The notes below the pieces were generated by a model. The model was not told the DNA's origin. It saw nothing but the letters and a program-made list of their open reading frames with translations, and made no database searches. Shown here piece by piece: positions 1,531 through 18,742 of a stretch of 64,000 bases of DNA. The position numbers were made by a program, and so were the translations under genes. Each line of letters starts with the position of its first letter. The stretch's first letter is position 1. Source of the stretch: Heteronotia binoei (taxonomy: Eukaryota); NCBI RefSeq assembly GCF_032191835.1, contig NC_083237.1, forward strand, positions 1,612,001 to 1,676,000, read 5' to 3'.

Positions 1531-4500
1531 CTGAAAGGGAACCTGTTAGCGATGCTGTAGGCCATGGTGCCGGTGATGGCCAGGAGCTCCAGCAGGATAG
1601 AGTTGAAGTTCAGCCCCTCGGCACTCTTGGCCCCCACGATCTTCAGGATCTGGGGAAGCTTCACTGCACAACGGGCAGGAAGAAGCAACAGTTAAGTGCT
1701 CACAAGCCACTCCCACAGCTTCTCTCCGCTACCACCCAACTGTCTCCTCCAGGGGAGAAAGGGCCTAGGATCCTGTTCCTCACCTGGTCAGACAGTAGCA
1801 GGCTTTGCCCCAGAGGAGAAAAGGTTTTAATCCTTTTTACTGTCCAGCCTCATATCTGAGGACAGGTTCATTCTGGGTAACCACCCTCACCATGTTCAAG
1901 CCAAAGGGAGATTCCTGGCTTCCAGATCTCCCTATTGGTTTTGATTATCTGCTCCTTGGCTCAAGAAGAAGACAATCGCAAGATTTATTCCCCGCCCTTC
2001 TCTCTGAATCAGAGACTTAGAGAGGCTCACAATCTCCTATATCTTCTTCCCCCACAACAGACACCCTGTGAGGCAGGTGGGGCTGAGAGAGCTCTCCCAG
2101 AAGCTGCCCTTTCAAGGACAACTTGTGCAAGAGCTATGGCTGACCCAAGGCCATTCCAGCAGCTGCAAGTGGAGGAGTGGGGAATCAAACCCGGTTCTCC
2201 CAGATAAGAGAACTATGGCTGACCCAAGGCCATTCCAGCAGCTGCAAGTGGAGGAGTGGGGAATCAAACCGGGTTCTCCCAGAAAAGAGAGCTCTGGCTG
2301 ACCCAAGGCCATTCCAGCAGCTGCAAGTGGAGGAGTGGGGAATGAAACCCGGTTCTCCCAGATAAGAGTCTGTGCACTTCACCACTACACTAAACTGGTT
2401 CTCAGGTGAATCACTACCTTTTCTTTGCCTACTAAGGGATAACTTGTTAAAATGTCAGTGGGGGTTCGCGGCAGAGGTACTCTCCCCAGGCTCTCCAGAT
2501 GTTAAACACCTGAGGTTCACATGGATTTAGCCTCAGCGTCTGAGGTCTATTTTGAACTGTTGGTAGTTTAATGCTTGAAATTGATCCTCATTGTGAAGGA
2601 TTTCTTGAAGAACAAAGATCCTTTTGGCTGTTGCCCTACAAGAGAGTTGTTAGCCTGCGGAGGGGGTCTCACAAAGTCACACTTGGTATGAGCAACGGGA
2701 GGGGGGGGGACGTCACAAACATTTTTTCACGAACAGAATGCTGGGAGACGTCCTCAGAGGTTAGTTTTCCGTACCCCTCAACTGCGGCAGGTGCGTCTCC
2801 CCCTCCCACTGAGCCTCTCCGGGGCTCTCTAACCTACGTGCAATCCAAGTGACCCTTCTGGCGGGGGAAGGTTTACGTGCTCCTACCCATGAGTGAGCCA
2901 GCAATGATCGCAAATCCCAGTCCCTTGCTGATCAGGATCTTGAGGCATGGAACTAAAAAGAAAAAGAAAGGGGAAAACGTCACTGGCTGCCACTGCTGTT
3001 CTCGACTGACTGTACAGCAACACTGCAAGAGAGGACACAATCCCAGTTTTGCTCATGGCAGCCAAGAAAGAGCAACTCTTTCTCAGGGGTCTCTGGAGGG
3101 ATGCCAGTCTCCGGGTGGAACACAGAGATCCCTGGAATTACAGCACATCTCCAGAGCTCAGTGGACTCTTATGGCATGCACCCCAGTGAAGTCCCTGACC
3201 TCCCCAGGTGCCATCCCTTCATCTCCAGTTTCCCAACCCAGATCTGGCAACCTTCCCATTCCCCACTGTTAGCCTGAGGGACCTGAGAAGCCCAGCTCTC
3301 CCCAGCTTTCCCCTGTGGCAGGACAGGCAGAAATCCAACAGACTGAGGCTTCACCTGCTATATGTCTGCATCTCAGGCTGCTCACCAAAAGCAGTGCCGC
3401 CAGAGGTGGGGCTGAGAGGTACCCCCCCCCCCCCCACACACACACCAGGTTCTGCAATACGAGAACTCGTGGGTGCTCCATGAAATTGCTGAGCAGTCGG
3501 GTTAGAATGGATAAAAGGAAGTCCTTCACCCAAAGGGTGATTAACGTGCAATTCACTGCCACAGGAGGTGGCGGTGGATACAAGCATAGACGGCTTCAAG
3601 AAGGGGTTGGATAAATATCTGGAGCAGAGGTCCATCAGTGACTAGTAGCCACAGTGTGTTGTTGGAACTCTCAGTCCGGGGCAGTGATGCTCTGTATTCT
3701 GGGTGCTTGAGGGGGGGCACAGTGGGAGGGCTTCTAGTGTCCTGGCCCCTCTAATGGATCTCTTGATGGCACTTGGTTTTTTTGGCCACTGTGTGACCCA
3801 GAGTGTTGGCCTGGAGGGGCCACTGGCCTGATCCAACATGGCCTCTTTTATGTTCTTATGTCTGGGGCAGTGACGCTCTGTATTCTTGGTGCTTGGGGGG
3901 GCACAGTTGGAGGGCTTCTAGAGTTCTGGCTCTACTGATGGACCTCCTGACGGCACCTGGTTTTTCTGGCCACTGTGTGACACAGAGTGTCAGCCTGGAG
4001 GGGCCATTGGCCTGATCCAATATGGCCTCTTTTATGTTCTTATGTCTGGGGCCAGTGATGCTCTGTATTCTTGGTGCTTGGGGGGGGCACAGTGGGAGGG
4101 CTTCTAGTGTCCTGGCCCCACTGATGGACCTCCTGATGGCACCTGGGTATTTTGGCCACTGTGTGACACAGAGATCTGGACTTGATGGGCCACTGACCTG
4201 ATCCAACAGGGCTTGTCTTATGAACGAAATAACTCCCATCCTAGCCCACCCCCTGTCCCGGCTGGAGCCCCACAACTAGCCCCTCAGTATGGCTGGATTC
4301 TGGAAGGGATGTGTTGCAGGGCTGCTAATGGGGCGAGATCTGCCCTAACAGCCCACTGGGGCGTCCTTGGAGGGCACACCGCCCAGCCAGGCAGCCCAAC
4401 GCCCAGCCTCAAGTCCCAGAGGCAGCAGGCCGCGGGGAGCCACTTCCGCCTAGAAAGCCCCGCGAGGGGTCGCCACAAGCAACGCAATTGCTGTTTTTAT

Positions 4501-4820
4501 CCTCAGGGAGCAGAAAGACAGCAAGAAACATTAAAAAAGGGAAGCCTGGGGACACTTCCGCCCCGTTCCAACATGGCGGGAAGAGCTGCGGCATCACTTC
4601 CGGCCCGCCTCCTTCCGCCCTCGCCCAAGATGGTGCCCGCCTGCCCTTCCGCCCCGCCGGCGGCGTTGCCATAGCGACGCTAGCTCTCCTGCCCCGGCGG
4701 CCGGGCGGAGGGAGGGAGGGACTCACTGTGCAAGAAGTTGAGCCGCAGGAAGAGCTCGTCGTAGCAGCTCTCGGGGAGGAGATGCGGGACCAGCAGGCCC
4801 TTCGGCGCCAACGACGCCAT
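1531..4820 (-). CDS. MPDU1: Mannose-P-dolichol utilization defect 1 (PQ-loop protein), exons 1-3; remaining exons not found in window
   Basis: Exon1 4820-4727 ([31 protein letters not shown], donor GTGAGT), exon2 2952-2887 (66 nt, [22 protein letters not shown]), exon3 1663-1531 (133 nt, [44 protein letters not shown]). All GT-AG, phases chain in frame, first PQ motif present. In-frame upstream ATGs (4865, 4886) make the exact start uncertain. Confidence 0.93.
1962..2400 (-). mobile_element. tRNA-derived Squam3-like SINE with an internal 79-nt module in three copies
   Basis: A/B-box head (TGGTGTAGTGG; GGGTTTGATTCCC) on minus; ggctgacccaagg at 2138, 2217, 2296. Confidence 0.8.
3440..4220 (+). 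mobile_element. CR1 3' end with ~184-nt 3'UTR unit in three copies
   Basis: ORF2 tail ([22 protein letters not shown]) followed by repeated 3'UTR ending TTATGTTCTTATG. Confidence 0.8.
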
Positions 4821-5130
4821 CTTGGCAAGCGGGGAGAGCCGAGCGGCGGAAGCGCCCGCCTCCATCTCGCCACACCCCGCGCCCATGCGCCCTGAGAGGC
4901 CGCCGAGATCCCCGCGCATGCTCAGACGCCTCCCGATCCCGCCGCGCCCAGCCGCCCGCTTGGTCAGGTAAGTAGGCCGCTTTGCATCTGTGCGCATGCG
5001 CGCTGTGCCTACAGCGGTCCCGACCGTCGCCGAAGGGGGCGCCGCAAAACAAGGCCGTCTGCGCGCATGCGCTGTCCGCTCAGGCCTGCCTGCCTTCCTT
5101 CCCGCCTCCCAGTTTGGCCAAGGGACAAAA
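4400..5130. promoter_or_regulatory. CpG-island bidirectional promoter shared by MPDU1 and the HARBI-like gene
   Basis: Very GC/CpG-rich. NRF1-type GCGCATGCGC at ~4992 and ~5063. YY1-type motifs at ~4816 (AAGATGGCG on minus, over the MPDU1 ATG) and ~5127 (AAAATGGCCG over the HARBI-like ATG). The two ATGs are 310 bp apart and divergent. Confidence 0.8.
4968..5112 (+). other. Predicted 145-nt 5'-UTR intron of the HARBI-like gene
   Basis: Consensus donor CAG|GTAAGT at 4967/4968; pyrimidine tract GCCTGCCTGCCTTCCTTCCCGCCTCCCAG ending at 5112, 17 nt before the ATG. Confidence 0.7.
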
Positions 5131-6479
5131 TGGCCGCCTCATCTCAGCAGCCATCTTGGGCCACCAGCCACAGCCAGGAAGCTCAGCTGCTGGCCACGCT
5201 GGGCCGTGGCACCGTGGCCTTGTGTCTCCTCTACTACGCCCGCCTGCAGCGAGGACGGCGCCTGCGTGAAGCTGCCCGCCGCCAGAGGGTCGCCTCCCAC
5301 CACCGCGCCCAGGCCCGGTCCCGCCAACGCTTCTCCTTGCTGTGGCTCTGCCAGATGCTGGCCCGAGCCCCGGGCACGGCTGGGGCTTGCCAGGAGGCCC
5401 ACGGCGGAGGGGGCAGGATGCCACGCTTGCTGCGGGAGCGGCGCCTGTGGAGCAAAGCCCGGAGCTCGGCCTTCTGGGAGACGGTGCGAGCCAAAGCCTT
5501 CAGCCCGTGGGAGTGGGTCGACAACTTCCGCGTGGCTCCTGCCACCTTCGACTACCTCTGCGCCCAGTTGCGGAATGCCATTCAGCGCCGGGACACTAAC
5601 ATGCGCCGGGCCATCCCAGCAGACGTGCGCCTTGCCATGACCCTCTGGCGCCTGGGGGCCTGCACCGAATACCGGGCGGTAGAGCAGCTCTTTGGCGTGT
5701 CACGCTCCACCGTCTGCAAGATCCTGCGCGACGTCTGCGAGGCGGTCGTGGCCATCCTGACCCCGCTGTACGTGCGCCCTCCGGACCCTGCCGAAGTGGC
5801 TGCCGGGAATGGCTTCCCCCTGCCCCAGCTGGCCGGAGTCCTGGGATCCCTCCACGTGCCCATCCGCGCACCCAATGAAAACGCCGCCGGCTACTACAAC
5901 CGCCACGGCTGGCATTCAGTGGTTGTGCAGGCTGCGGTGGATTCCCGTGGCTGTTTCTGGGATATCAACGTCGGGTGCCCTGGCAGGGTGACAGAGCCGC
6001 AGGTCCTGTGCACATCTGAGCTGTATCAACGAGCTCAAGAGGGTGAACTGTTCCCAGGCGCGTCCCAACCTGTCAGGGGAGTCCAGGTGCCCCTCTATCT
6101 GCTGGGCAGCTGCTCATACCCTTTCCTCCCTTGGCTCATGCGTCCCTATCGCAACGCGGCTCTCACGCCAGCCCAGCAGCGCTTCAACGAGTATGCAGCC
6201 GCTGCACGGACGGTAGTTGGGGTGGCCTTCGGACGCCTGCGAGGGCGTTGGCGCTGCCTCACTAAGCGCAACGATACAGACGTCTCCTTTCTGCCGACCC
6301 TCATCGCCGCCTGCTGCACCCTCCACAACGTCTGCGAGGCCCGGGGCGACGTCTTCCAGTCCGGCTGGATGGAAGAGGAAGAGGAGCAGCTGGAGGAACA
6401 TCCCTTCGATGACGGGGAGGAGGAAGACGTTGAGGCGGTGGAGATCCGGGATGCGCTGGCCTCAGCACTGAGGGGCTAA
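5130..6479 (+). CDS. HARBI1/ALP1-like Harbinger (PIF/Harbinger DDE_Tnp_4) transposase-derived protein, single coding exon, 449 aa from ATG 5130
   Basis: Uninterrupted ORF with Harbinger motifs: NFRVAPATFDYL, RLAMTLWRLG, HTH LFGVSRSTVCKI, YNRHGWHSVVVQAAVD, YPFLPWLMRPY, AFGRLRGRWRCL, ACCTLHNVCE, acidic tail ending IRDAL. ATG context aaaATGG lies 18 nt after a strong acceptor at 5112; the ORF-track start at 5067 is inside the predicted intron. Confidence 0.9.
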   Translation: MAASSQQPSWATSHSQEAQLLATLGRGTVALCLLYYARLQRGRRLREAARRQRVASHHRAQARSRQRFSLLWLCQMLARAPGTAGACQEAHGGGGRMPRLLRERRLWSKARSSAFWETVRAKAFSPWEWVDNFRVAPATFDYLCAQLRNAIQRRDTNMRRAIPADVRLAMTLWRLGACTEYRAVEQLFGVSRSTVCKILRDVCEAVVAILTPLYVRPPDPAEVAAGNGFPLPQLAGVLGSLHVPIRAPNENAAGYYNRHGWHSVVVQAAVDSRGCFWDINVGCPGRVTEPQVLCTSELYQRAQEGELFPGASQPVRGVQVPLYLLGSCSYPFLPWLMRPYRNAALTPAQQRFNEYAAAARTVVGVAFGRLRGRWRCLTKRNDTDVSFLPTLIAACCTLHNVCEARGDVFQSGWMEEEEEQLEEHPFDDGEEEDVEAVEIRDALASALRG

Positions 6480-7885
6480 CTGGAGAAGCGAAGGCTGTGG
6501 AGCCAGTCGAGTGGTACCTCTCGGTGGATTTACGGGGCCGGCGTCTGAGGTTTGCAGCAGCAGGGAAATAAGCCTCTGTGGAATCTGAAAGCCTGCCCCT
6601 CCCTCTGGAGATAGTTTGAGAGGCCTGCAGGCAAACAGCTAGAGTTGAATCCGGTACCACCTTAGATAAGAGCAGAGGAGAAACGCTGCCCCTAAGCATT
6701 ATCCTGCTCTGTTCAAGCTGATAACATTCTGCATCCTGAGCCCCTTCTTGGCAAGATCTGCCTGGGAGAGAAGGACTCGGGGGGGGGGGATCTCCGTTCC
6801 AACTTGTATCTGATGAAGGAAGCTTGGCGTCTGGAAAGCTCATGCCTGGGAAATCTGGCTGCTCTCGCAGGTGCTGCTGGAGTCCCATCTAGCTGAACCA
6901 ATTAGAAGCTTTCGTTTTATCTAGTTTGCATTCCCACCTCCTTGACAGCAGCTCTGCCCACTCATCCTCCCCCCCTCCCGGTACAACAGAGGAGCTGAAG
7001 GTAGAAGGCAAACAGCAGGACCTTCTAAAATGTCCGGAGGGCTTTGGGGGCAGGGGAGCTGGGAGGGACAGGGGGTCTTGTGCCTGGAAGGTACAGAGCG
7101 CTGCCCAGTAAAACGTGTCATCCTTAGAGGAAGAGCTCGTCCCTTGTCTGTCCACTGGAAGCTGCCCCATCCACATTTTTACCTTTCTTGCTCATCAGTT
7201 AATTGGAGCCATTTTGACTGCCAGGTTGAACCTTGGAGTGCTGGAAATTGCCAGAGCCTCTGGGCTTGGGTACCTTTTGCTGACTTCCCACCCTCCCACT
7301 CCCTTTATTCTTTTTGTTTGTAAGTCTCCTTTTGTCATTGTAGAATGATGTATCTTACAGGGGGATGCCGAGTTCTTGAGACTGAGCTGTGAGTTCCCTG
7401 CTGCGCTCTTCTTCCCTCTGAAACAAACTCATTCAGGGGCCTTCAGCAAACCCTTCCTCCTCTTGCAGCCTTGGCCTACCTTGCAGGGCTGTGGTCAGGA
7501 GTCCAACAAAAGACTGGCTGCAAATTGTTCCGACCCCTGAAAGAGGGGCATAAAAGTCAGCTCTTATTATAGATGGTGTTCTACTTAGATGGCATTTTCT
7601 GTTTCTTAGTTTGGCGGGCGGCGGGCAGGAGAAACTGAATAACTTGCAAGAAATACTCAAAAGCCAAAAGTCATCTAATACAAAATACCATTAAAACTCA
7701 GCTAATAAAGAAAGGCAAGCAACATTTTTCCAAAATCACTTCTCAAGTGCTTGAAATAAGACGTAACACAACAGCAGGTATCGTCCTGCTACCTTGGGGA
7801 GAGAATATCAGCGGTTTCTCTGCTGCCACACCCTCCAGTTGCAGGGCTAGCCCACCCTCCCGCATTTGAAAAGCCACCCCTTTGC

Positions 7886-8246
7886 TTAGAAGAAGAAGAA
7901 TTGCAGATTTATACCCCGCCCTTCTCTCTGAATCAGAGACTCAGAGCGGCTCACAATCTCCTATATCTCCCCCCCCCCCAACAGACACCCTGTGAGGTGG
8001 GTGGGGCTGAGAGGGCTCTCACAGCAGCTGCCCTTTCAAGGACAACTCCTATGAGAGCTATGATTGACCCAAGGCCATTCCAGCAGGTGCAAGTGGAGGA
8101 GTGGGGAATCAAACCCGGTTCTCCCAGATAAGTGAGCTCTGGCTGACCCAAGGCCATTCCTGCAGCTGCAAGTGGAGGAGTGGGGAATCTAACCCGGTTC
8201 TCCCAGATAAGAGTCCACGCACTTAACCACTACACCAAACTGGCCT
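7886..8246 (-). mobile_element. Squam3-like SINE
   Basis: Same consensus as the other copies; (GAA)n tail. Confidence 0.75.
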
Positions 8247-8572
8247 ATCCCCCTTGGAGAATGTGGATGCCCCATTTCAAGGCCTTTGGTGGGGTGGAGC
8301 CACACAATGGCCAATGGCTGGGGCTGATGGGAGTTGTAGGCAAAAAACATCTGGAGAGCTACCACTGGCCACCCCTGACCTAAGCGATGATTCAGGCCTC
8401 TTGTGATTGGCAGAGTGGGAAGACCCGGCTGGAGGAGTCCCCTCCACAGGTGCACCAGCACCTCCCAGTCCTGGGCGCATTCCCACAGAAGCCAACCTGC
8501 TCAGCATGGCTTACTCGCAGGTAAGTGTGCAAAGGAGCAATGCCTGCAACCCTGTGCCTACTTACTTGGGAG

Positions 8573-8762
8573 CAACGTTCCCTCTAAGCCGCAGAGTCTT
8601 GTGAGCAAAGAAATCTACTTTGTGAGCTACTGGCGCTAAAGTTGTGAGCTGCATAAATTGTGCTCCGGGGTCCTCCTTCCTGAGCTAAGACAAAAATGTG
8701 TGAGCTGGAGGCTAAAAAATCTGTGAGCTAGCTCACGCTAACTCAGCTTAGAGGGAACACTG
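8573..8762. mobile_element. hAT-type MITE, 190 bp
   Basis: TIR CA(GT/AC)GTTCCCTCTAAGC at both ends; perfect 8-bp TSD CTTGGGAG (8565-8572, 8763-8770). Related copies at ~22417-22612 and ~43840-44040. Confidence 0.85.
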
Positions 8763-9337
8763 CTTGGGAGTAGACCCCAGTCACTTCAGTACGACTGACT
8801 TCTGTGTAATCAGGCAACAGATCCGGGGGGTACAGTCCCTTGCCTGTCCGGCGGAAGAATTAACTCCATGATGGTTGGATCGTCTTGTTCGTGGCTGAAC
8901 AGACGGTGGCTTTGGATCTCTTGCAATACACACTACTACATCTCCCCCCCCCCCCCAAAAAAAAAAAGCAAACCCAACAACAACACACAGATACATCTCG
9001 CTTCCTTTCTTCCTTCAGTTCTTTGAATTGAACAACAAATGCAACGTTGGGATGCATTGAGCGGCTGGAGGGCCTGGAGGCAAATGGGGTCTTCCCTGTA
9101 GCTTTACTGTGGGGTCGGAAGCAGCAGAACACAGTCTGAGTCCAATTGGCGGCACCTTGAAGGCCAACAAGGTTTTATTCAAGGTGTGAGTTCTCCCCTG
9201 CGCATTCACTTCCTCAGAGACAAGGACATGGAAGTCCCCAGTCCATAACATACAGGGTGAGAGTGAGCAGTGAAGCTGTATACAGTATGATGAAGATGTT
9301 TAATAGATTCAGTGACATAACAGGAATAACAAGAAGA

Positions 9338-9719
9338 TGATGTTATTGGATTTATATCCCGCCCTCCACTCCAAAGAGTCTCAGAGCTGCTCACAATCTC
9401 CTTTCCCTTCCTCCCCCACAACAGACACCCTGTGAGGTGGGTGGGGCTGGAGAGGGCTCTCCCAGCAGCTGCCGTTTCAAGGACAGAGTCTCAGAGCAGT
9501 CTACAATCTTCTTTCCCTTCCTCCCCCACAACAGACACCCTGTGAGGTGGGTGAGGCTGAGAGGGCTCTCACAGCAGCTGCCCTTTCAAGGACAACCTCT
9601 GCCAGAGCTACGGCTGACCCAAGGCCATTCCAGCAGCTGCAAGTGGAGGAGTGGGGGATCAAACCCAGTTCTGCCAGATAAGAGTCCGCACACTTCACCA
9701 CTACACCAAACTGGCTCTC
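9338..9719 (-). mobile_element. Squam3-like SINE with duplicated tail
   Basis: Matches family consensus. Confidence 0.75.
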
Positions 9720-10171
9720 TTAGTTTACGAAGTTACTCAGTTCTGCCAAAGCCACCCAGTAATCTTCAAACTCATCTCAATGGCTCTCTTAGTTTACGTG
9801 GTTACCATTTGTTGGGGTATAATTTGGGTGGGGGGGGGGGAAGCCTAGCGCAGGAGATAAAGATGTCAAAATTGGAGAGTGATGGGCAGCTATAGCCTTA
9901 ATTGTGGAATGCTGAGAGCAGGGGCTCAGTTAATGACTTTCAGCGTTCCACAAGGAAGGTGATTTTCATTTCATTTAGTCTGTAGCAGGGTGCGTGCACA
10001 AAGCAGCTTACGCCTGCAGGAAAACGTTTGTTGGTGTTCAAGCTGCCCGTTGGCTCCAGCTTTGTTCTGGTATTCCCTGATGTTATCCAGAGAGGGGCAC
10101 AGTTCCGGTTCTTTGCTGTCCCCTCGGCCCAGGGGAAGCTCCGCGGGTTGGTGCCCGCTGGCCGAGGCTCC

Positions 10172-13100
10172 TTAGAGGGTTTCGTACCCCACGTGGCTCC
10201 GCCTCCGTCCCACCGCGTAGGCCACCAGGACGATGACGATGAGAAGGACAATGATCACGATGACGACGATGGGCACGAGGAGTGAACGCCGCTGCTCCTT
10301 ACAGACCTCCGCTGGAAAAGGAAGCAAGGTGTCAGGGAAAAGGAAGGCAGGTCGAAAGGACTGAAGCTTCCCTCTGGCTAATGGCTAGGTTTTCAAAATG
10401 GCGGCCCTGGGAGAGCCAGTCTGTGCTCGGCCCTTGGTGTGTGAGGGGGAAAGAGAGGCCATCAAGCAAGTGCTCCAAGACAGGCTTCTGTAGGAGGGTT
10501 AAAGGTCAGACCGGAAGCAAGGGTTGAGGCTGTTGGGGGAGAGGTCACACCTTAGCCATTGAGATGAGTTTGAAGATTACTGGGTGGCTTGGGCAGAAAT
10601 GAGTCACCTCAACCTCTGAGACAAGGCAGTATTTTCATTGCCGGGATATGTACGGAAATGGAGGGCAGAAGAGACATTCCACGAGGCTGCTGGTGACGCA
10701 GAACTGAAGGGTAGCAAACATTCTGGACGGGGGGGATGAGCGGTGACCGAGCATCAGAGCGGCACCCAGATATGGGTGGGTCTCGCCAGATCTGAGCAGT
10801 CAGGTTGGAACGGATAAAAGGAAGTCCCTCTTCACCCAAAGGGTGATTAACACACGGAATTCACTGCTGTAGGTAGTGGCGGCTACAAGCATAGCCAGCT
10901 TCAAGAGGGGATTGCATAAGCATCTGGAGCAGAGGTCCCTCAGTGGCTATTAACCACAGCTTATCCTTGGGACTCTCTGTCTGGGCAGTGATGCTCTGTT
11001 CTTGGTGCTTGAGGGGAGGGGCACAGTGGGAGGGCTTCTGGTGTCCTGGCCCCACTGATGGACCTTTTGATGGCTCCTGGTTTTTTTGGCCACTGTGACA
11101 CAGAGTGTTGGACTGGATGGGCCACTGGCCTGATCCAACAGGGCTTCTCTTATGTTCTTATGTGACACAGAGTGTTGGACTGGATGGGCCACTGGCCTGA
11201 TCAAACATGGCTTCTCTTATGTTCTTATGTCTGGGGCAGTGATGCTCTGTATTCTTAGTGCTTGGAGGGCAAAAGTGGGAGGCCTTCTAGTGCCCTGGCC
11301 CCACTGATGGACCTTCTGATGGCACCTGGGTTTTTTGGCAACTGTGTGACACAGAGTGTTGGGCTGGATGGACCATTGGCCTGATCCAACAGGGCTTCTC
11401 TTATGTGACACAGAGTGCTGGACTGGATGGGCCATTGGCCTGATCCAACAGGGCTTCTCTTATGTGACACAGAGTGCTGGACTGGATGGGCCATTGGCCT
11501 GTTCCAACATGGCTTCTCTTATGTTCTTATGTGCCACAGAGTGTTGGACTGGAGGGGCCATTGGCCTGATTCAACAGGGCTTCTCTTATGTTCTTATGTG
11601 ACACAGAGTGTTGGACTGGATGGGCCATTGGCCTGATCCAACAGGGCTTCTCTTATGTGACACAGAGTGCTGGACTGGATGGGCTATTGGCCTGATCCAA
11701 CATGGCTTCTCTTATGTGACACAGAGTGCTGGACTGGATGGGCCATTGGCCTGATCCAATATGGCTTCTCATATGTTCTTATGTGCCACAGAGTGTTGGA
11801 CTGGAGGGGCCATTGGCCTGATTCAACAGGGCTTCTCTTATGTTCTTATGTGACACAGAGTGTTGGACAGGCTGGGCCACTGGCCTGATCCAACAGGGCT
11901 TCTCTTATATTCTTATGTGACACAGAGTGTTGGACTGGATGGGCCATTGGCCTGATCCAACAGGGCTTCTCTTATGCTCTTATGTGACACAGAGTGTTGG
12001 ACTGGATGGGCCATTGGCCTGATCCAACAGGGCTTCTCTTATGTTCTTATGTGACACAGAGTGTTGGACTGGATGGGCCATTGGCCTGATCCAACAGGGC
12101 TTCTCTTATGTGACACAGAGTGCTGGACTGGATGGGTTATTGGCCTGATCCAACATGGCTTCTCTTATGTGACACAGAGTGCTGGACTGGATGGGCCATT
12201 GGCCTGATCCAATATGGCTTCTCATATGTTCTTATGTGCCACAGAGTGTTGGACTGGAGGGGCCATTGGCCTGATTCAACAGGGCTTCTCTTATGTTCTT
12301 ATGTGACACAGAGTGTTGGAAAGGCTGGGCCACTGGCCTGATCCAACAGGGCTTCTCTTATATTCTTATGTGACACAGAGTGTTGGACTGGATGGGCCAC
12401 TGGCCTGATCCAACAGGGTTTCTCTTATGTTCTTATGTGACACAGAGTGTTGGACTGGATGGGCCATTGGCCTGATCCAACAGGGCTTCTCTTATGTTCT
12501 TATGTGACACAGAGTGTTGGACTGGATGGGCCACTGGCCTGATCCAACATGGCTTCTCTTATGTCCTTATGTGACACAGAGTGTTGGACTGGATGGGCCA
12601 TTGACCTGATCCAACATGGCTTCTCTTATGTTCTTATGTGACACAGAGTGTTGGACTGGATGGGCCATTGGCCTGATCCAACATGGCTTCTCTTATGTTC
12701 TTATGTGACACAGAGTGTTGGACTGGATGGGCCATTGGCCTGATCCAACAGGGCTTCTCTTATGTTCTTATGTGACACAGAGTGTAGGACTGGATGGGCC
12801 ACTGGCCTGATCCAACAGGGCTTCTCTTATGTTCTTATGTGACACAGAGTGTTGGACTGGATGGGCCACTGGCCTGATCCAACAGGGCTTCTCTTATGTT
12901 CTTATGTGACACAGAGTGTTGGACTGGATGGGCCATTGGCCTGATCCAACAGGGCTTCTCTTCTGTTCTTATGTGACACAGATTGTTGGACTGGATGGGC
13001 CATTGGCCTGATCCAACAGGGCTTCTCTTATGTTCTTATGTGACCCAGAGTGTTGGACTGGATGGGCCACTGGCCTGATCCAACAGGGCTTCTCTTATGT

Positions 13101-16100
13101 TCTTATGTGACACAGAGTGTTGGACTGGATGAGCCATTGGTCTGATCCAACAGGGCTTCTCTTATGTTCTTATGTGACACAGAGTGTTGGACTGGAGGGG
13201 CCATTGGCCTGATCCAGCAGGGCTTCTCTTATGTTCTTATGTGACCCAGAGTGTTGGACTGGATGGGCCAGTGGCCTGATCCAACAGGGCTTCTCTTATG
13301 TTCTTATGTGACACAGAGTGTTGGACTGGATGGGCCACTGGCCTGATCCAACAGGGCTTCTCTTATGTTCTTCTCTCAGAAGCTAATCAGTATCAGCTCT
13401 GTTTAGTATTTGGATGGGAGACCACCAGGGAGGATGAGGGCAGCTCTGCCTCTGAACACCTTGGAGACCCCAAGAGGTGTTGCCATAAACAGAACCTCTC
13501 CACCACCACCACCACCAGGCATCAGTGCCCAAGGGTGCACACGAGGGGGAAGCCTCCCTTTTGGGGGGGGGGGCATACGGCCTCTTTAAAATGATGCAAG
13601 AGTACAGTGGTTGTCTCACCTTCCCCAAATTTTCCACCTTGCAGCTCAAAGGCCTGGACTTGCTCATTCAGGACATGAAGGCGAAAGTCTCCAGCGAGGG
13701 TCAAAGTGCGGTTTCGGCACTGGTAGCTGTGCCCGAGGGAGGCCTCAAACTCTTGGAGAGAGGAAGCGTCTGCTCCAAAGGACATCTCTGGGAAGGGAAA
13801 GGGAGGCCGTGAGGCTCTGGCTGAGGACTGGCTCAGAGGCTGAGTTCCAGGCAGAATCCGGCACCACCGGCTGGCCCCCCAGCACCTCTGTTCAGTGCAG
13901 TAGGCGGTCCGGGGGCTCTGGAGCTGGCCAACCTCAGTTCTGGTGCCCCCCAAGCTTTTAAAGAAAGTGGGTGGGGCTTAGATAGGGTTTCTCCCCAGCA
14001 AATCTTGTGATTGGCTGTGCTGACCTTTTTAAAATGGCAGCAACTACCCTGACAGCAGAAAGATCTTCACTGTACGACTGAAGGTAAGAACTGGCAGCCA
14101 TTTTGTGCCCACGACGCTGTCTCTGAATCCCAAAGGCGCTAGCTGGCTCCGAAAGGTTGAGGAACCCTGGCCTAGTGGCTTGGCTTTGCGCCTAGGAGTC
14201 CCGTGAAGAGATTTTAGGCAATCTCCCAGGCCGACCCCCACCTTACATGGGGATTGTAAGGACGGAATGTGACCAGTCCTTGCTGCAGCCAGTTCACCCT
14301 CTGCATAAAGGAGATTCTTTGGGGCTTGTTGCAGTTCTGCAACTTTTGAGTCCCCCTCTAAATGTGCAAAGGGACAGAAATGAGAAAAGGCTGGGATTTA
14401 GAATCCTTCCAGAGTAGAAAGAAACCCATGCACAGACAACGCTGGAGCAAAATGGGCAGGTTTTTAGGCTCCCCCTGGGAACAGGTAGAGCCGGCATCCA
14501 ACTCAAAGCTCTCAAAGCCGGGCGGAGACCTGCCTGTGGACCTTGCTCTCAAGTGCCTTCAGCCCGTGAACTGTTTCTAAGGGAGGTCAGCTAGCTGATG
14601 CTGGGGGCTGAAGGGCCAGAGATCGAGAGCCAAAGGAGAAGCAAGCAGATCTCGGCGGGCTGCAGTCGGAACCAGAAAGGCCCCCTCCTGGACCGTTCTG
14701 CTCTGCTACGGTTCTTACCCCTCCGCTCCATACGAGTGTTGCAAAAGCATTCTCTCTGGCCAGGCCAGGCAAAACTCCATCCATCCAACAGACTTCTCAT
14801 TTGCAACAAAAGGTGGGGGCACCCTTCCCCCCAAAGCCCCTCACCTGTTGCCTGCATGAACTGGTAGGTCAGGTTGGCCTGGACTCTGCTCAGGTAAGAC
14901 GTCCCTCTGGTTTCATTCTGCGGGAGAGAAATCTGGGTTTTCTTCTGTGGGAGGGTTGGCATCCCGTGCCAGGAATCAAGCATTCTGAAGAGAGCTGCAC
15001 CCAGTGGAGGCGAGGCATGCGTATGAGAGGCCCAGGGCGCTCCCCGGGGGAAATACAGACAGGCCTGATGTTTGGGGGGCGGGGGAGGGAGATGTACAAG
15101 GAGTTGCCTCTTACTGAATCAGACCCCCTCTTGGTCCATGAAAGCGTTGTCTACTCAGATTGGCAGCGGCTCTCTCTCCAAGGTCTCAGGTGGACCTTAG
15201 CCGCAGATGCTGCCGGGGATTGAACCTGGGTCCTTCTGCATGCCGAGCAGAAGTTCTTCCGCTGAGTCATGGCTCCTTCCCAAAGAACACGCAAATGAGC
15301 AGGCTTTACCCTGAGTCAGGCCATCTAGGTCAGTCTTGCCTACTCAGACTGGCAGCGGCTCTCCAGAGTTTCGGGCAGAGAAAGGTCTTTCGTATCATAT
15401 CCTTTCAACTGGAGATGCTGCTGCTGGAGATTGAACCTGGGACTTTCTGCGTGCCAAGCAGAGGCTCTTCCACTGAGCCATGGCCCTCTCCACGGGGAAT
15501 TTGGATTTTAAGCAACGGGATACATTCATGGGGCAAAAGATCGTGGCAGGGAAACGGCAGGCCCCCGGCCAATACTGGTCCTGAGGCAGAATCCCTGGCA
15601 GCCTGAACCCAGAAGGCATCGTTCAGGATGGCGTGGAAAGAGGGTTGTCTGTGCCTGAGCCACGGCTGCCTGCTGAGCTCGCCCTTCCAGCCGCAGACAA
15701 GGCACTTCCAAAGCCATCAGTGAGTGAGTCAGTCTGTGTTCCTTCCCTCTCCACCGGTCCGATGACCTTCCGCGCCCCCAGGCTCACTTGCTCGAGTCAC
15801 CTTCAAGCAGGAATTGTTTTTTGTGGCGGAGCCGGTTGTTGGCTTGAGGCCAGTGAACCTCCAGGTTTAATGGGGGAGCAGTGTAGATTTGGGCCAGTCC
15901 TGACGCAGAAGAAGAGGTTGTGGACTAGCAAGGCCAGGTAGCCAATTTGCCCGGTGACCCCCCGCCCCTCCACTTGAACATGTCTCCTCAGACTCACAGC
16001 CTGGCCAGCCTGCTCCAGGACAGCATGCAAACCCTAGAGTGCCACAGTACAAATCAGTTGCGCAAAAACAAAAAAGCTGTGGAAAAATAATGAACGGCTA

Positions 16101-18742
16101 TCGAAGAAAATTTTTTTTAAAATAAATCAATTTTCCAAAAGCGGTTCACAAATATATAAAGTACAAAGTGCGGAGAATAAAGCTCCCAAGGAATTTCTGT
16201 GCCATGCGGGGCGTTTTGTGATGTTGTCTCTTTGACAAAGGAATCTTCGGAAAAAGTATTCCGGGCGGCTTTACTGTCAGAGGCTACTGGCTGCCCACTC
16301 CCAGTATAAAGCTGAACTGAACGATGCAGCTTTTCTCTTGGCTATTTTGAAAATGAGAAAAATGCTCATGAAATAATCCACCCGGAGGCGGGCGAGTGCT
16401 CCAGAGGCGCTCGAAGTCTGAAATTGACAAGATTGCACGGGAGATTTCTTTGGAACTTTATTCTCCGCACTTTGTACTTTGGAACTGGAGGACTTTTGTG
16501 CATTTTGTAGTAAGATGTATTTGGGAACTGCTTTTGAAAAATGGATTTATTTAAAAAAAAAATCTGCTTGTTTTTGTTTTTGCGCAACTGCTCCGGGATA
16601 GCAACGGGCATCTGAGTCAGGGTGTCTTTTGAAAAAGTCCCCAAGCTCTGTGCCAAGAAAGGGGAAGTTCTGCTGCTGAGATGCCAATTAAGCAGGCACA
16701 CGTCTCGGTCATGCCTTTTGCGGGGTGAGTCAGCAGCCCGGAGGAGGCTGAGAGGCCGGGAGAGGGAGGGGTTCTGGCCTGCCTGGTCTGGAGGAAGTTT
16801 CCCTCTTCCCTGAGCTATCAGGGCTTCCTGGTGAAAGTGATTGGCAAGGCGTCCAAGACCGAAAGTGGGAGGGATTTCCTGTGACCCCACGAACATGTGT
16901 GGAACTCACTGCCACAAGGTGCTGCAATGACCGGTCGCTTGCGGGGCTGTGAAAGGTCTCCATGACTGCTGAAGGAAACCTCCCTGTTGTTCTTGCTGGC
17001 TTTTACGTTTGGCCACCTGGAGACGGGGAGCTGCCATGGGGTGGATCAGACCGTCCAAGTCTGGCTTGGCTTTTCTGATGGTCGGGGGCTCTCCAGGGTC
17101 TCCTGGGTCCTTTTCAACTGGAATACTGCTGCTGGGGGTTGAACTGGGGACCTTCTGCGTGCCGAGCAGATACTCTGCAGCCCCTTCCCTCAATATGCCT
17201 TGAGTCTTGTTTGGGAAGGTGGACTGTAACTGAGTCGGGAAGCAGTTATTCCCGGGGTGGGGGGGAGGCGGTGTCCTTCAGGCCCTTCTGGGGGCACCGG
17301 GGCAGAAGCCCAGCCCCTCACTGTCCCGTCAATACCCAGAGGTTAAGCCGAGCCCTCCTGGCTGTGCCCAAGTGCCAACCATCCAGCTGCGATGGAGAAT
17401 TTCCTCTGCTTCCCCCTCTCCTCCCACCCCCTGTGCATCCTGTCTCTCTCCCCCCCCCTCGCGGTACCTTTTTGAAGACGAAGACAAGGGAGCCCTCCGG
17501 AAAGCGCAGCCGGAGCGTGGCCTCCTGGCTGGAGCAGCCCCCCGAGGTGTTGGTATGGTTGGGCTGCACCGCAAACATTCCCCAGAGCTGGCGGAGGAAA
17601 AGAGAAGGTCAGAACCACCCCAGAGGCCATGCTTGGCACTCCCTCCCGACGTGGTCAGAGCCTTGGTGGCCACGAAGGGCGGCACACGAGACTTGCAGGG
17701 CAGAGAGCACCAGGGGCCGCCTCCTCTACTTCCTCCCCCCCCCAGCATCTTCCTTCCTGCCCCCTGCTTGTCTAAGGGTCTTTCCTTCGCCCACACAGCC
17801 TTTCTCTGAAGGCACCGTTGCTCTAAACTGCTGGGCACCGCCGGTAGTGGAGTCCTGTGCAGACGAGGGGGCCAGTGAGAGGGCAGACACGGAGGCAGAA
17901 CGTCAGGGCAATGGGGGCTGCCCCCTCTGGCCTGGTGCCCACAGTGCCCCAACCTCAGTACCCGGCATTCCTCGCTCAACTGCAGGTGCCCCTTTGCCCA
18001 GCAGAGCGCCTTGACCCATTGCTTCGATTCCCCTCTCGTGCCAGGCCAACCCACAGCCCCTGCCCAGTGCTTACCAATTGCTTAGCCTTGCTGGTGTACT
18101 GGACTTGGAGCTGGAGGCCTGCTACCAGCCGCATGCAGGCGGCGGACCCGTTCCGGACCACGTAATCGCCCACGGCCACAAGGGGTGAGTCTGTGGGCCA
18201 CGGGGCTGTAGTGACGATGCTGGGGTGGGGGGTGGGGGGATGGGGCGTGGTGTGGTTGACTGGCCTTGTCGTGAGAACGGAGGTGGTATGATTGGTGGGG
18301 TGGTGCGTGGTGTGATTGGCCGGACGGCTTGTGGTGTGAAAGGGGGTGGTACGATTGGTGGGGTGGTGCGTGGTGTGATTGGCCGGACGGCTTGTGGTGT
18401 GAAAGGGGGTGGTACGATTGGTGGGGTGGTGCGTGGTGTGATTGGCCGGACGGCTTGTGGTGTGAAAGGGGGTGGTACGATTGGTGGGGTGGTGCGTGGT
18501 GTGATTGGCTGGCAGCGTGGTGTGATTAGCGGCATGTGTCGTGGGATGGTGCGTGGTCTTCGGATGGCGGGTGGTGGACGGTGTCGTGGTCTTGGTAAAG
18601 GAGGGCAGCAGCGTGGCGGCTTTTTTCCTACGGGGGCAACTCGGGTCTGCTGGTTCGATGCCAGAACACAGCGAGTCCCCAGGAGGCCCCGGCCTCTGCA
18701 AGAGCCCCTGCGATGCCGCTTCGTCCTGACTGGAAGCCCAGA
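10172..18742 (-). CDS. CD68: CD68/macrosialin (LAMP family), exons 2-6; signal-peptide exon 1 not located
   Basis: Exon2 18742-18075 (668 nt, CPRRKKAATLLPSFT, mucin domain, start of LAMP domain), exon3 17587-17468 (120 nt), exon4 14917-14845 (73 nt), exon5 13787-13620 (168 nt), exon6 10311-10172 (TM helix plus GYETL* lysosomal GYxxPhi motif). GT-AG with compatible phases; position between EIF4A1 and MPDU1 matches human synteny. Confidence 0.92.
10795..13372 (+). repeat. CR1 3' fragment expanded into a ~2.3 kb minisatellite of 59/67-nt units (CD68 intron 5)
   Basis: Unit TGTGACACAGAGTGTTGGACTGGATGGGCCATTGGCCTGATCCAACAGGGCTTCTCTTA(TGTTCTTA), roughly 33-35 copies; matches the 3' terminus of the CR1 at 57301-59430. 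Confidence 0.92.
16055..16590. mobile_element. Foldback/MITE-like element with ~145-nt imperfect inverted arms
   Basis: Arms 16055-16200 and 16440-16590 begin CAGTTGCGCAAAAAC and share AAAGTACAAAGTGCGGAGAATAAAG in inverted orientation; no TSD recognised. Confidence 0.55.
18287..18510 (-). repeat. Coding tandem repeat, 63-nt unit (ANHTTHHPTNRTTPFHTTSRP), 3 copies plus a partial, in CD68 exon 2
   Basis: 63-nt period read directly (gtgcgtgg at 18303, 18366, 18429). Confidence 0.9.

What the first reader, a model, noticed from the sequence alone, without database searches (positions are those of the whole stretch)
5130..6479. Candidate domesticated Harbinger-transposase gene inserted between CD68 and MPDU1
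Seen: a fully open 449-codon Harbinger-type ORF, while every other TE fragment in the window is decayed. It has host-like GC-rich codons, lies in a CpG island, and I see no TIRs, TWA TSD or adjacent Myb/SANT ORF. Known: autonomous Harbingers carry transposase plus a Myb-like gene between TIRs; vertebrate HARBI1 sits divergently with ATG13, not here; the human SENP3-EIF4A1-CD68-MPDU1 block has no such gene. Inference: a separate domestication event or HARBI paralogue that captured the MPDU1 promoter. It may already correspond to an annotated but uncharacterised HARBI1-like locus; I cannot check this.
Basis: partly seen in the sequence, partly recalled or inferred. Interest (0 to 1): 0.9.

Follow-up and report, generated by a model that had tools for sequence, protein, structure and literature searches.

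The report
Ancient nuclease-dead Harbinger gene beside MPDU1
A jumping-gene enzyme was captured by the host at least ~350 million years ago, lost its DNA-cutting residues, and has been kept as a single-copy gene sharing a promoter with MPDU1 in reptiles, turtles and amphibians; databases auto-name it "HARBI1" or "ALP1-like", but I found no paper describing it.

Summary
Window 5130-6479 (+) is an intact single-exon 449-codon ORF for a PIF/Harbinger DDE_Tnp_4 protein. It lies in a CpG island, about 310 bp head-to-head with MPDU1 exon 1 and upstream of CD68. It has no TIRs, no Myb ORF and no second copy in the window.

The domestication reading is supported:
- The same MPDU1(-)|gene(+)|CD68(-) layout occurs in five other squamates and two turtles. 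A caecilian and a toad show the MPDU1 head-to-head pairing.
- Codon-model omega is 0.06, lowest in the transposase core.
- Twenty-one members form one clade (support 0.995): coelacanth, amphibians, amniotes.
- No mammalian member was found.
- RNA-library contigs tile the ORF and a ~1.25 kb 3' UTR.

New here: the first catalytic Asp is replaced in every member, and this window reads G/E/G for D/D/E. So the protein is almost certainly not a nuclease, despite its database name.

It is only 21-26% identical to true HARBI1 (Xenopus and zebrafish included) and 34-44% to DDE-intact TE-like transposases. That favours a separate domestication.

The likely function is inferred, not shown: a non-catalytic nuclear adaptor that may work with a Myb/SANT partner, as plant ALP1 does.

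Verdict: a new member of a known kind. It is annotated automatically, and no paper in the searched library describes it.

The parts
5130..6479 (+). Single-exon CDS (449 codons plus stop) of the Harbinger-transposase-derived gene
   Evidence: ORF. DDE_Tnp_4 E=1.3e-27. Start and stop conserved in orthologues. omega 0.062.
5172..5366 (+). N-terminal long helix (aa 15-79): a hydrophobic stretch followed by an Arg-rich stretch. Also present in DDE-intact relatives, so it is ancestral to this Harbinger lineage.
   Evidence: AF2 model. Alignments. 9 K/R against 1 D/E in aa 45-80. Squamate dN/dS 0.35 over aa 1-115.
5475..5801 (+). Helical HTH-like region (aa 116-224)
   Evidence: Weak HTH_Tnp_4 hit, aa 167-204, E=0.0066. 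Helices in the model. dN/dS 0.15 over aa 116-215.
5829..6344 (+). RNase-H-like transposase core (aa 234-405) with all three catalytic positions substituted: G239 (codon 5844-5846), E289 (5994-5996), G364 (6219-6221)
   Evidence: Alignments and triad scoring. Model strands and helices. This is the most constrained region: dN/dS 0.074 over aa 216-405.
4822..5129 (.). Shared bidirectional CpG-island promoter between the MPDU1 ATG (4821, - strand) and the gene's ATG. Carries GCGCATGCGC palindromes at 4992-5003 and 5061-5072, plus a partial one at 4913-4924.
   Evidence: Sequence. Inverted repeats I11 and I16. GC 0.70 and CpG o/e 1.01, with the same motif upstream of the ATG in 6 of 7 orthologous loci. 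An MPDU1 RNA contig reaches 5011 and the gene's own contigs start at 5170. Reading the palindrome as an NRF1 site is from my own knowledge.
6480..7730 (+). Probable 3' UTR ending after the only poly(A) signals in 6480-9000 (ATTAAA 7690, AATAAA 7704)
   Evidence: RNA-library contigs at 6405-6653, 6566-6782, 7084-7316 and 7642-7811. Poly(A) signal scan. The end point is inferred.
4727..4821 (-). MPDU1 first coding exon ([15 protein letters not shown]...), divergent neighbour
   Evidence: tblastn with turtle and lizard MPDU1 exon fragments, 61-82% identity. Sequence and splice donor. A spliced RNA contig starts at 4727.
10175..18686 (-). CD68-like (Lamp family) gene, convergent downstream neighbour
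   Evidence: tblastn exon hits at 10321-10175, 13791-13615, 14917-14828, 17605-17453 and 18686-18051. Lamp-domain genes sit in the same position in orthologous loci.

Best explanation
This is a host gene that arose by domestication of a PIF/Harbinger transposase.

Age. It dates at least to the tetrapod ancestor. It probably dates to the sarcopterygian ancestor, because a coelacanth protein is sister to the tetrapod clade.

Shown. The gene is a single-exon, single-copy ORF. It keeps the same place across squamates and turtles, head-to-head with MPDU1 and upstream of CD68; in a caecilian and a toad the MPDU1 pairing is seen. It evolves under strong purifying selection. It has lost all transposon hallmarks: TIRs, a Myb partner ORF and multiple copies. 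Every member lacks the first catalytic Asp, and this gecko-like copy reads G/E/G at the D/D/E positions. It is covered by RNA-library contigs consistent with a ~2.6 kb mRNA that starts back-to-back with the MPDU1 transcript in a shared CpG island.

Inferred. The protein cannot cut DNA. It acts through what selection has preserved: the HTH region and the RNase-H-like fold as a binding surface. By analogy with every characterised Harbinger domesticate (HARBI1-NAIF1, ALP1-ALP2-PRC2, HDP1-HDP2), the most likely role is a nuclear adaptor. It would pair with a Myb/SANT trihelix protein (NAIF1 or an MSANTD) and bring or block a chromatin or transcription complex at that partner's DNA sites. I give about 40% to this adaptor mechanism. 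I give about 90% to the domesticated, non-catalytic gene status.

Distribution. The gene appears lost in mammals. In the one bird locus examined it is displaced from MPDU1 and fast-evolving.
For: ORF and domain.

Orthologues: 93% identity (gecko) down to 44-58% (birds, amphibians, coelacanth), each on one contig.

Synteny: MPDU1(PQ-loop,-)|gene(+)|CD68(Lamp,-) in Podarcis, Chrysemys, Rhineura, Erythrolamprus, Anolis sagrei and Lepidochelys. MPDU1 head-to-head in Microcaecilia and Bufo. The same layout in the window.

Selection: NG86 dN/dS 0.09-0.23 among squamates and at most 0.39 against the bird. The DDE core is lowest at 0.074. The GY+F3X4 codon model gives omega 0.062, with lnL -5610.7 against -6325.5 when omega is fixed at 1.

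Triad: D1 is G, S, C or A in all 20 members scored, while 73 of 118 and then 90 of 93 outgroups keep DDE.

Tree: family monophyletic at support 1.0, and at 0.995 with coelacanth sister to tetrapods; topology broadly follows the species tree.

Fold: top reviewed matches are ALP1-like, ALP1 and HARBI1 at 21-26% identity. TE-like transposases are 34-44% identical.

Expression: contigs from RNA libraries cover 5170-7316 and 7642-7811 with 0-4 mismatches. There is none over MPDU1 intron 1 (4394-4590). A related species (~90% identity) is also covered.

No TIRs, no Myb ORF, no second copy in the window.

Literature: HARBI1 is named as the only transposase-derived Harbinger gene known in vertebrates (PMC9392472). 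ALP1 is a DGA-triad PRC2 accessory factor (PMC4671723).
Against: - No functional data of any kind; the adaptor/Myb-partner mechanism rests on analogy.
- RNA evidence is Logan contigs at depth 3-6 from libraries that may carry some DNA. It shows neither strand nor ends.
- Coelacanth synteny could not be checked. Its protein is nearly as close to TE-like transposases (44-56%) as to the tetrapod genes (46-57%).
- No tree with true HARBI1 sequences could be built, so 'independent domestication' rests on identity levels and fold-search ranks.
- D2 and E3 are retained in some lineages (snake GDE, Hyla GDE), so residual metal binding in those cannot be excluded.
- The Chrysemys copy is frame-disrupted in its assembly. 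The bird copy is out of synteny with higher dN/dS. The gene is therefore dispensable in some lineages.
- Absence from mammals rests on protein-database searches, not on genome searches.
Confidence: 0.85

Rival explanations
1. It is the HARBI1 orthologue moved to a new place, or an old duplicate of HARBI1, and not a separate domestication.
For: Sources name it 'putative nuclease HARBI1'. HARBI1 entries are strong fold matches, TM by hit 0.79-0.82. No HARBI1 sequence was available for a tree.
Against: - Identity to HARBI1 is only 21-26%, Xenopus and Danio HARBI1 included.
- Xenopus tropicalis also has a member of this family, P0031, so the two genes coexist.
- DDE-intact TE-like transposases of sea urchin, beetle, fish, sponge and acorn worm are much closer, at 34-51%.
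- HARBI1 did not reach the best 150 of 13,256 relatives.
- The protein is 449 aa with an N-terminal helix, against 349 aa for HARBI1.
Confidence: 0.05
2. It is a transposon copy, recent or relic, that happens to be intact. Its conservation would reflect chance or selfish maintenance, not host function.
For: It belongs to a TE protein family. Harbinger elements exist in lizard and coelacanth genomes (PMC3014272 and PMC9179366).
Against: - One copy per genome at the same syntenic site in nine species (six with both neighbours, two amphibians with MPDU1) spanning amniotes and amphibians.
- omega 0.06.
- No TIRs, no Myb ORF and no other copy in the window.
- The catalytic D1 is lost in all members, so the protein cannot maintain itself by transposition.
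Confidence: 0.01
3. It is still a nuclease or recombinase that uses other acidic residues, or the partial triad kept in some lineages. The database name 'putative nuclease' would then be right.
For: The most constrained region is the RNase-H-like core, dN/dS 0.074. D2 is kept in many members and E3 in snake, caecilian, Hyla and coelacanth. The window has Glu at the D2 position.
Against: - D1 is replaced by G, S, C or A in all 20 members.
- This window and most amniotes have Gly at both D1 and E3.
- The substitutions differ between lineages, as expected once catalysis is no longer selected.
- ALP1 shows the same pattern (DGA) and acts non-catalytically (PMC4671723).
Confidence: 0.05
4. The ORF is kept open because the DNA is constrained as regulatory sequence for MPDU1 or CD68 (a CpG island), not because the protein matters.
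For: It lies in the MPDU1 CpG island, with conserved GCGCATGCGC motifs upstream.
Against: - Synonymous sites are close to saturation (dS 0.6-1.4) while non-synonymous change is 5- to 15-fold lower.
- That is protein-level selection, not DNA-level conservation.
- The bird copy stays open without MPDU1 nearby.
Confidence: 0.02

Closest known systems
HARBI1 (vertebrate Harbinger-transposase-derived gene; partner NAIF1)
   Same: Both are derived from a PIF/Harbinger transposase, carry a DDE_Tnp_4 fold with an HTH in front, are single-copy host genes, and have lost TIRs and the linked Myb gene. Fold match TM 0.79-0.82.
   Different: Only 21-26% identical. A different locus (MPDU1/CD68). 449 aa against 349 aa, with an extra N-terminal helix. 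The catalytic D1 is lost in all members, whereas HARBI1 is reported to keep DDE (my knowledge of Kapitonov and Jurka 2004; not tested here). Not found in mammals, whereas HARBI1 runs from cartilaginous fish to mammals (PMC9392472).
ALP1 / ALP1-like (Arabidopsis nuclease-dead Harbinger domesticate, PRC2 accessory factor)
   Same: These are the best fold matches among reviewed proteins. Both are transposase-derived with a broken catalytic triad: ALP1 reads DGA and this gene reads G-E-G. Both are under host selection.
   Different: An independent event in plants; 22-24% identity. Here D1 itself is lost. No evidence links this protein to Polycomb. The database label 'ALP1-like' reflects similarity only.
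Drosophila DPLG genes and plant HDP1/HDP2 (co-domesticated Harbinger transposase and Myb pairs)
   Same: The same evolutionary route, and the same expectation that the transposase-derived part works with a Myb/SANT-derived partner (PMC9710019 and PMC5339849, listed).
   Different: No partner gene has been identified for this one. The linked Myb ORF is absent from the locus.
Active PIF/Harbinger transposases of marine invertebrates and fish (e.g. P0210, P0211, P0048, P0042)
   Same: Closest sequence relatives, at 34-44% identity to the window protein and up to 56% to the coelacanth member. They share the N-terminal hydrophobic/basic helix, the HTH and the core.
   Different: They keep DDE (90 of 93), and many belong to clusters of several near-identical sequences spread over several contigs. 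This gene is single-copy, syntenic and catalytically dead.

Membership tests
PIF/Harbinger transposase superfamily (sequence family) | DDE_Tnp_4 / Plant_tran transposase core | tested here: met
   PF13359 E=1.3e-27 (96.8 bits, cut-off 24.8); PF04827 E=1.1e-7.
PIF/Harbinger transposase superfamily (sequence family) | N-terminal HTH DNA-binding domain | tested here: inconclusive
   HTH_Tnp_4 scores 16.5 bits, below the cut-off of 27. Helices at aa 116-224 in the AF2 model. Precomputed DUF8040 hits in the orthologues.
Autonomous (active) Harbinger element | Intact catalytic DDE triad | tested here: not met
   G239, E289 and G364 in the window. D1 is absent in all 20 family members, against DDE in 73 of 118 and 90 of 93 outgroups.
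Autonomous (active) Harbinger element | Terminal inverted repeats and a 3-bp TSD flanking the element | tested here: not met
   Only short, chance-level inverted pairs, none bracketing the ORF. The TSD cannot be assessed without TIRs.
Autonomous (active) Harbinger element | Second ORF encoding a Myb/SANT-like DNA-binding protein | tested here: not met
   No Pfam hit in 10 of the 16 ORFs of 70 aa or more between the gene and CD68. Upstream lies MPDU1.
Autonomous (active) Harbinger element | Multiple copies per genome | tested here: inconclusive
   No other copy in the 64-kb window. Each orthologue is on one contig. A whole-genome copy count for this species was not possible.
Domesticated transposase gene (operational criteria) | Orthologues at a conserved syntenic position across distant species | tested here: met
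   MPDU1|gene|CD68 in 5 squamates (plus the window) and 2 turtles. MPDU1|gene in a caecilian and a toad. Not kept in the pigeon.
Domesticated transposase gene (operational criteria) | Purifying selection on the coding sequence | tested here: met
   omega 0.062. Fixing omega at 1 is worse by 715 lnL units. Pairwise dN/dS 0.09-0.39.
Domesticated transposase gene (operational criteria) | Transcription as a host gene | tested here: inconclusive
   RNA-library contigs tile the ORF and 3' UTR but not the neighbouring intron. Depth is low, strand and ends cannot be seen, and DNA carry-over is not excluded.
HARBI1 orthologue group | One-to-one orthology with HARBI1 (high identity, no coexisting HARBI1) | tested here: not met
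   21-26% identity to HARBI1 of human, mouse, rat, cow, Danio and Xenopus. Xenopus has both this family (P0031) and HARBI1 (Q5U538). HARBI1 is not among the top 150 relatives.
   The locus is MPDU1/CD68. HARBI1's own context was not verified here.
ALP1-type nuclease-dead Harbinger domesticates (functional analogy) | Loss of catalytic triad residues while under selection | tested here: met
   ALP1 reads DGA (PMC4671723).
ALP1-type nuclease-dead Harbinger domesticates (functional analogy) | Association with a chromatin complex through a Myb-derived partner | not testable with these tools
This needs IP-MS or Y2H.

The most novel reading that the evidence does not exclude
This gene is one of several unrecognised, mostly nuclease-dead Harbinger-transposase genes in non-mammalian vertebrates. 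The others seen here are a bird plus caecilian family, the teleost zgc:113227, and a tuna plus ray family. It would be the missing transposase-derived partner of one of the Myb-like Harbinger genes (NAIF1, MSANTD1-4). MSANTD3 is the obvious candidate, because it is reported to have arisen in sarcopterygians, the same range as this family (PMC9392472). Mammals would then have lost the transposase half of a once co-domesticated pair. That could help explain why the mammalian MSANTD proteins lack a clear mechanism.
Probability: 0.15. Interest if true: 0.75.

Novelty: new member of a known kind. Interest (0 to 1): 0.55.

Why it matters
The vertebrate literature recognises a single Harbinger-transposase-derived gene, HARBI1, against five Myb-like-derived genes (NAIF1, MSANTD1-4). 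All of their functions are poorly understood. A second transposase-derived gene has several consequences:
- It is older than the amphibian-amniote split, catalytically dead and missing from mammals, so vertebrates domesticated Harbinger transposases more than once.
- It is a natural candidate partner for the orphan Myb-like genes.
- It can be studied in Xenopus, Anolis or chicken-like models.
- Thousands of automatic records call these proteins 'putative nuclease HARBI1' or 'ALP1-like'. For this family both names mislead: it is neither HARBI1 nor a likely nuclease.

Tried and rejected
- PDB: no hit by sequence and none by Foldseek at E<=1e-3. No solved structure of this fold family was found.
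- HARBI1 sequences: a profile word-index search with A1 and the exhaustive phmmer search did not return true HARBI1. A joint tree was therefore impossible, and I did not type sequences from memory.
- Coelacanth locus: not on record, so synteny there is unknown.
- Caecilian and toad loci: listed without DNA, so they did not enter the dN/dS analysis.
FastTree with SH-like supports was used instead.
- Fish zgc:113227 and the Rhinatrema paralogue were tested as possible MPDU1-linked orthologues and rejected. They lie next to EMC1 and a HEAT-repeat gene.
- Frog N-terminal extensions: no Pfam domain.
- Earlier scan notes: none near this place.
- Literature: searches for MPDU1 with Harbinger, for HARBI1-like or HARBI2, and for zgc 113227 found nothing relevant.
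- ESM Atlas: only generic DDE_Tnp_4 clusters.
- Complex prediction was not used. No candidate partner sequence was available, and neighbourhood alone is not a reason to test MPDU1 or CD68.
Full report
**Observation**

The window holds an open frame at 5067-6479 (+). It is the conserved start, because all orthologues begin MAA.... Its context is acaaaATGg.

Pfam assigns the protein to DDE_Tnp_4 (E=1.3e-27) and Plant_tran, with a sub-threshold HTH_Tnp_4 hit. The ORF is GC-rich (0.67; GC3 0.78). The 308-bp spacer upstream is a CpG island (GC 0.70, CpG o/e 1.01).

The neighbours were confirmed by tblastn with exon fragments from turtle and lizard loci:
- MPDU1-like exons lie on the - strand. The first coding exon is 4821-4727 ([10 protein letters not shown]...).
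- CD68-like exons lie on the - strand between about 10.2 and 18.7 kb.

The transposon hallmarks are absent:
- No inverted-repeat pair brackets the ORF.
- ORFs between the gene and CD68 have no Pfam domain, so there is no Myb/SANT partner.
- The window holds no second copy.

**Orthologues and synteny**

A search of 5.8 billion proteins returned full-length relatives:

| Group | Identity to the window protein |
|---|---|
| Gecko (Euleptes) | 93% |
| Other squamates | 72-87% |
| Turtles | 67-80% |
| Birds | about 58-65% |
| Caecilian | 52% |
| Frogs | 44-54% |
| Coelacanth | 51% |

No mammalian protein appeared, and each named genome hit sits on one contig or two.

Genomic context look-ups show the same layout, PQ-loop/MPDU1 (-), this gene (+, single exon), Lamp/CD68 (-), in Podarcis, Rhineura, Erythrolamprus, Anolis sagrei, Lepidochelys (two assemblies) and Chrysemys. 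The turtles also have a SOX15-like HMG gene beyond MPDU1. Microcaecilia and Bufo show MPDU1 head-to-head with the gene.

The pigeon Caloenas is the exception. No MPDU1 or CD68 exons lie within 10 kb, and the upstream neighbour is a Sad1/UNC gene.

**Selection**

I used seven intact CDSs: the window, Podarcis, Rhineura, Erythrolamprus, Anolis, Lepidochelys and Caloenas.
- Nei-Gojobori dN/dS is 0.09-0.23 within squamates and at most 0.39 against the bird.
- By region among squamates it is 0.35 (N-terminus), 0.15 (HTH region) and 0.074 (transposase core).
- A GY+F3X4 codon model gives omega 0.062. Fixing omega at 1 lowers lnL from -5610.7 to -6325.5.
- dS of 0.6-1.4 shows that the DNA itself is not conserved. 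The constraint is on the protein.

**Catalytic triad**

In alignments with DDE-intact relatives, the motifs GAIDGTH, PGSxHDA and vvENAFGRLK mark the D, D and E positions. The table shows what the family has at each position.

| Position | State in the family |
|---|---|
| D1 | Gly in squamates, turtle and frogs; Ser in the caecilian; Cys in coelacanth; Ala in the pigeon |
| D2 | Variable: D, E, Q, H, N, C, or deleted |
| E3 | Gly in most amniotes; kept in one snake, the caecilian, some frogs and coelacanth |

D1 is never Asp in any of the 20 members. The window reads G239, E289 and G364.

Among outgroups, 73 of 118 keep DDE in the first set. In the second set, the closest relatives of the coelacanth protein, 90 of 93 keep it.

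Loss of D1 is therefore ancestral to the family, and later losses are lineage-specific. That is what one expects once catalysis is no longer selected. The core is nevertheless the most constrained part, so it serves another purpose.

**Phylogeny and relation to HARBI1**

An exhaustive phmmer search of 1.84 billion representatives found 13,256 relatives. There is a clear gap in scores. Family representatives score 330-480 bits, and everything else scores 289 bits or less at 29-47% identity, apart from family fragments.

FastTree (LG+gamma) places the family in one clade, with support 1.0 among 138 sequences. With 188 sequences the support is 0.995, and coelacanth is sister to tetrapods. The topology broadly follows the species tree.

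An AlphaFold2 model (pLDDT 78, pTM 0.70) shows a long N-terminal helix, a helical HTH region and an RNase-H-like core. Among reviewed proteins it best matches Arabidopsis ALP1-like and ALP1, then HARBI1 of six vertebrates, all at 21-26% identity.

Three points argue that this is not HARBI1 and probably not a HARBI1 duplicate:
- Xenopus and zebrafish have their own HARBI1, and Xenopus also has a member of this family.
- DDE-intact TE-like transposases are far closer, at 34-56% identity.
- HARBI1 did not reach the top 150 relatives.

I could not obtain HARBI1 sequences through the tools, so no joint tree was made.

**Expression**

Two RNA-seq runs of one organism hold contigs matching the window with 0-4 mismatches. 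They lie at 5170-5328, 5388-5656, 6062-6403, 6405-6653, 6566-6782, 7084-7316 and 7642-7811, at depth 3-6. There are none over MPDU1 intron 1 (4394-4590).

A 1,101-nt spliced MPDU1 contig ends at 5011. A run of a related species (~90% identity) also covers the ORF.

The only poly(A) signals between 6480 and 9000 are at 7690 and 7704.

Together this suggests a ~2.6 kb intronless mRNA whose start lies within about 100-160 bp of the MPDU1 transcript start, in one bidirectional CpG-island promoter. The spacer carries GCGCATGCGC palindromes at 4992 and 5063. The same motif lies within 400 bp upstream of the ATG in six of seven orthologous loci. I know this motif as the NRF1 consensus, which is my own knowledge.

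Contigs cannot show strand or ends, and some DNA carry-over is possible. I therefore rate transcription as likely, not proven.

**How it probably works**

Shown:
- a host gene under purifying selection;
- no transposon ends;
- a dead active site;
- retained HTH and core folds;
- an Arg-rich N-terminal helix, also present in active relatives;
- an acidic C-terminal tail (17 D/E in the last 44 residues).

Inferred: a non-catalytic nuclear protein that uses the transposase fold as an interaction surface. Three precedents support this:
- In Harbinger systems the transposase binds a Myb-like protein that brings nuclear import and DNA targeting. HARBI1 binds NAIF1 (PMC9392472, citing Sinzelle 2008).
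- ALP1, with triad DGA, is a PRC2 accessory subunit (PMC4671723).
- HDP1/HDP2 and the Drosophila DPLGs repeat the pattern.

The most likely mechanism (about 40%) is thus an adaptor paired with a NAIF1/MSANTD-type protein at chromatin. MSANTD3 is reported to have arisen in sarcopterygians, the same range as this family. That makes it a candidate partner, but the link is speculative.

**Comparison and novelty**

The gene meets the operational criteria of a domesticated transposase. It fails those of an active Harbinger element and those of HARBI1 orthology. It resembles ALP1 in kind (nuclease-dead) but arose independently.

Databases already annotate it automatically, as 'putative nuclease HARBI1', 'ALP1-like' or 'uncharacterized'. 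The searchable literature names HARBI1 as the only transposase-derived Harbinger gene of vertebrates and says nothing of an MPDU1-linked one.

I rate it a new member of a known kind, of moderate interest.

**Limits**

- Coelacanth synteny, whole-genome copy number in the source species, mammalian absence at the DNA level and any function remain untested.
- The nearest sister lineages also lack D1: tuna plus ray, then starfish plus tick. They may be deeper orthologues, separate domestications, or drawn together by long-branch attraction.

Noticed in passing
L003:9500-12500 (Chrysemys picta): The turtle Chrysemys copy reads through only in pieces across three frames, and its gene model is 383 aa. 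The Lepidochelys copy is intact. This is either an assembly error in a GC-rich stretch or lineage-specific decay.
   Followed up: partly
L002:1-21266 (Caloenas nicobarica): The pigeon orthologue is an intact ORF, but no MPDU1 or CD68 exons lie within 10 kb and a Sad1/UNC gene is upstream. It has a deletion over the D2 motif, the longest branch in the tree, and dN/dS of 0.2-0.39. A Columba model (P0037) is even fused to the Sad1_UNC neighbour.
   Followed up: partly
P0065 cluster (birds), P0208 (Rhinatrema): A second conserved Harbinger-derived family lies outside this one. It has 103 bird sequences (triad DNE) and a caecilian protein (GNE). In Rhinatrema the gene is multi-exon and head-to-head with a 301-aa HEAT-repeat gene. 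It also looks undescribed.
   Followed up: partly
L009:10001-11302 (Brienomyrus), P0053/P0205: The teleost gene 'zgc:113227' is a DDE-intact Harbinger-type protein next to EMC1. It is not MPDU1-linked, and no paper in the searched library mentions it.
   Followed up: partly
P0071 (Thunnus, Pampus), P0090 (Narcine): These are the closest sisters of the sarcopterygian clade (support 0.94) and also lack the first catalytic Asp (GSD, GED). They may be deeper orthologues, which would date the gene to jawed vertebrates. Synteny could not be checked.
   Followed up: partly
P0064/P0199 (Asterias), P0193 (Ornithodoros): Starfish 'ALP1-like' genes with several isoforms, shared by two Asterias species (triad GDD), and a tick protein (GAS) group near the family. 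They are possibly independent invertebrate domestications, or a long-branch artefact.
   Followed up: no
P0017, P0020, P0031, P0052, P0306 (frogs): Frog orthologues are 560-630 aa because of an N-terminal extension of about 110-180 aa with no Pfam domain.
   Followed up: partly
window:4000-4390, 7750-8900, 9320-9720: High-copy, SINE-like repeats flank the gene. RNA-library contigs pile up on them at depths of 10^4 to 10^5, with many variants.
   Followed up: no
window:5067-5129: An in-frame upstream ATG at 5067 would add 21 codons. It lies inside a GCGCATGCGC palindrome and has no counterpart in orthologues, so it is probably not used.
   Followed up: yes
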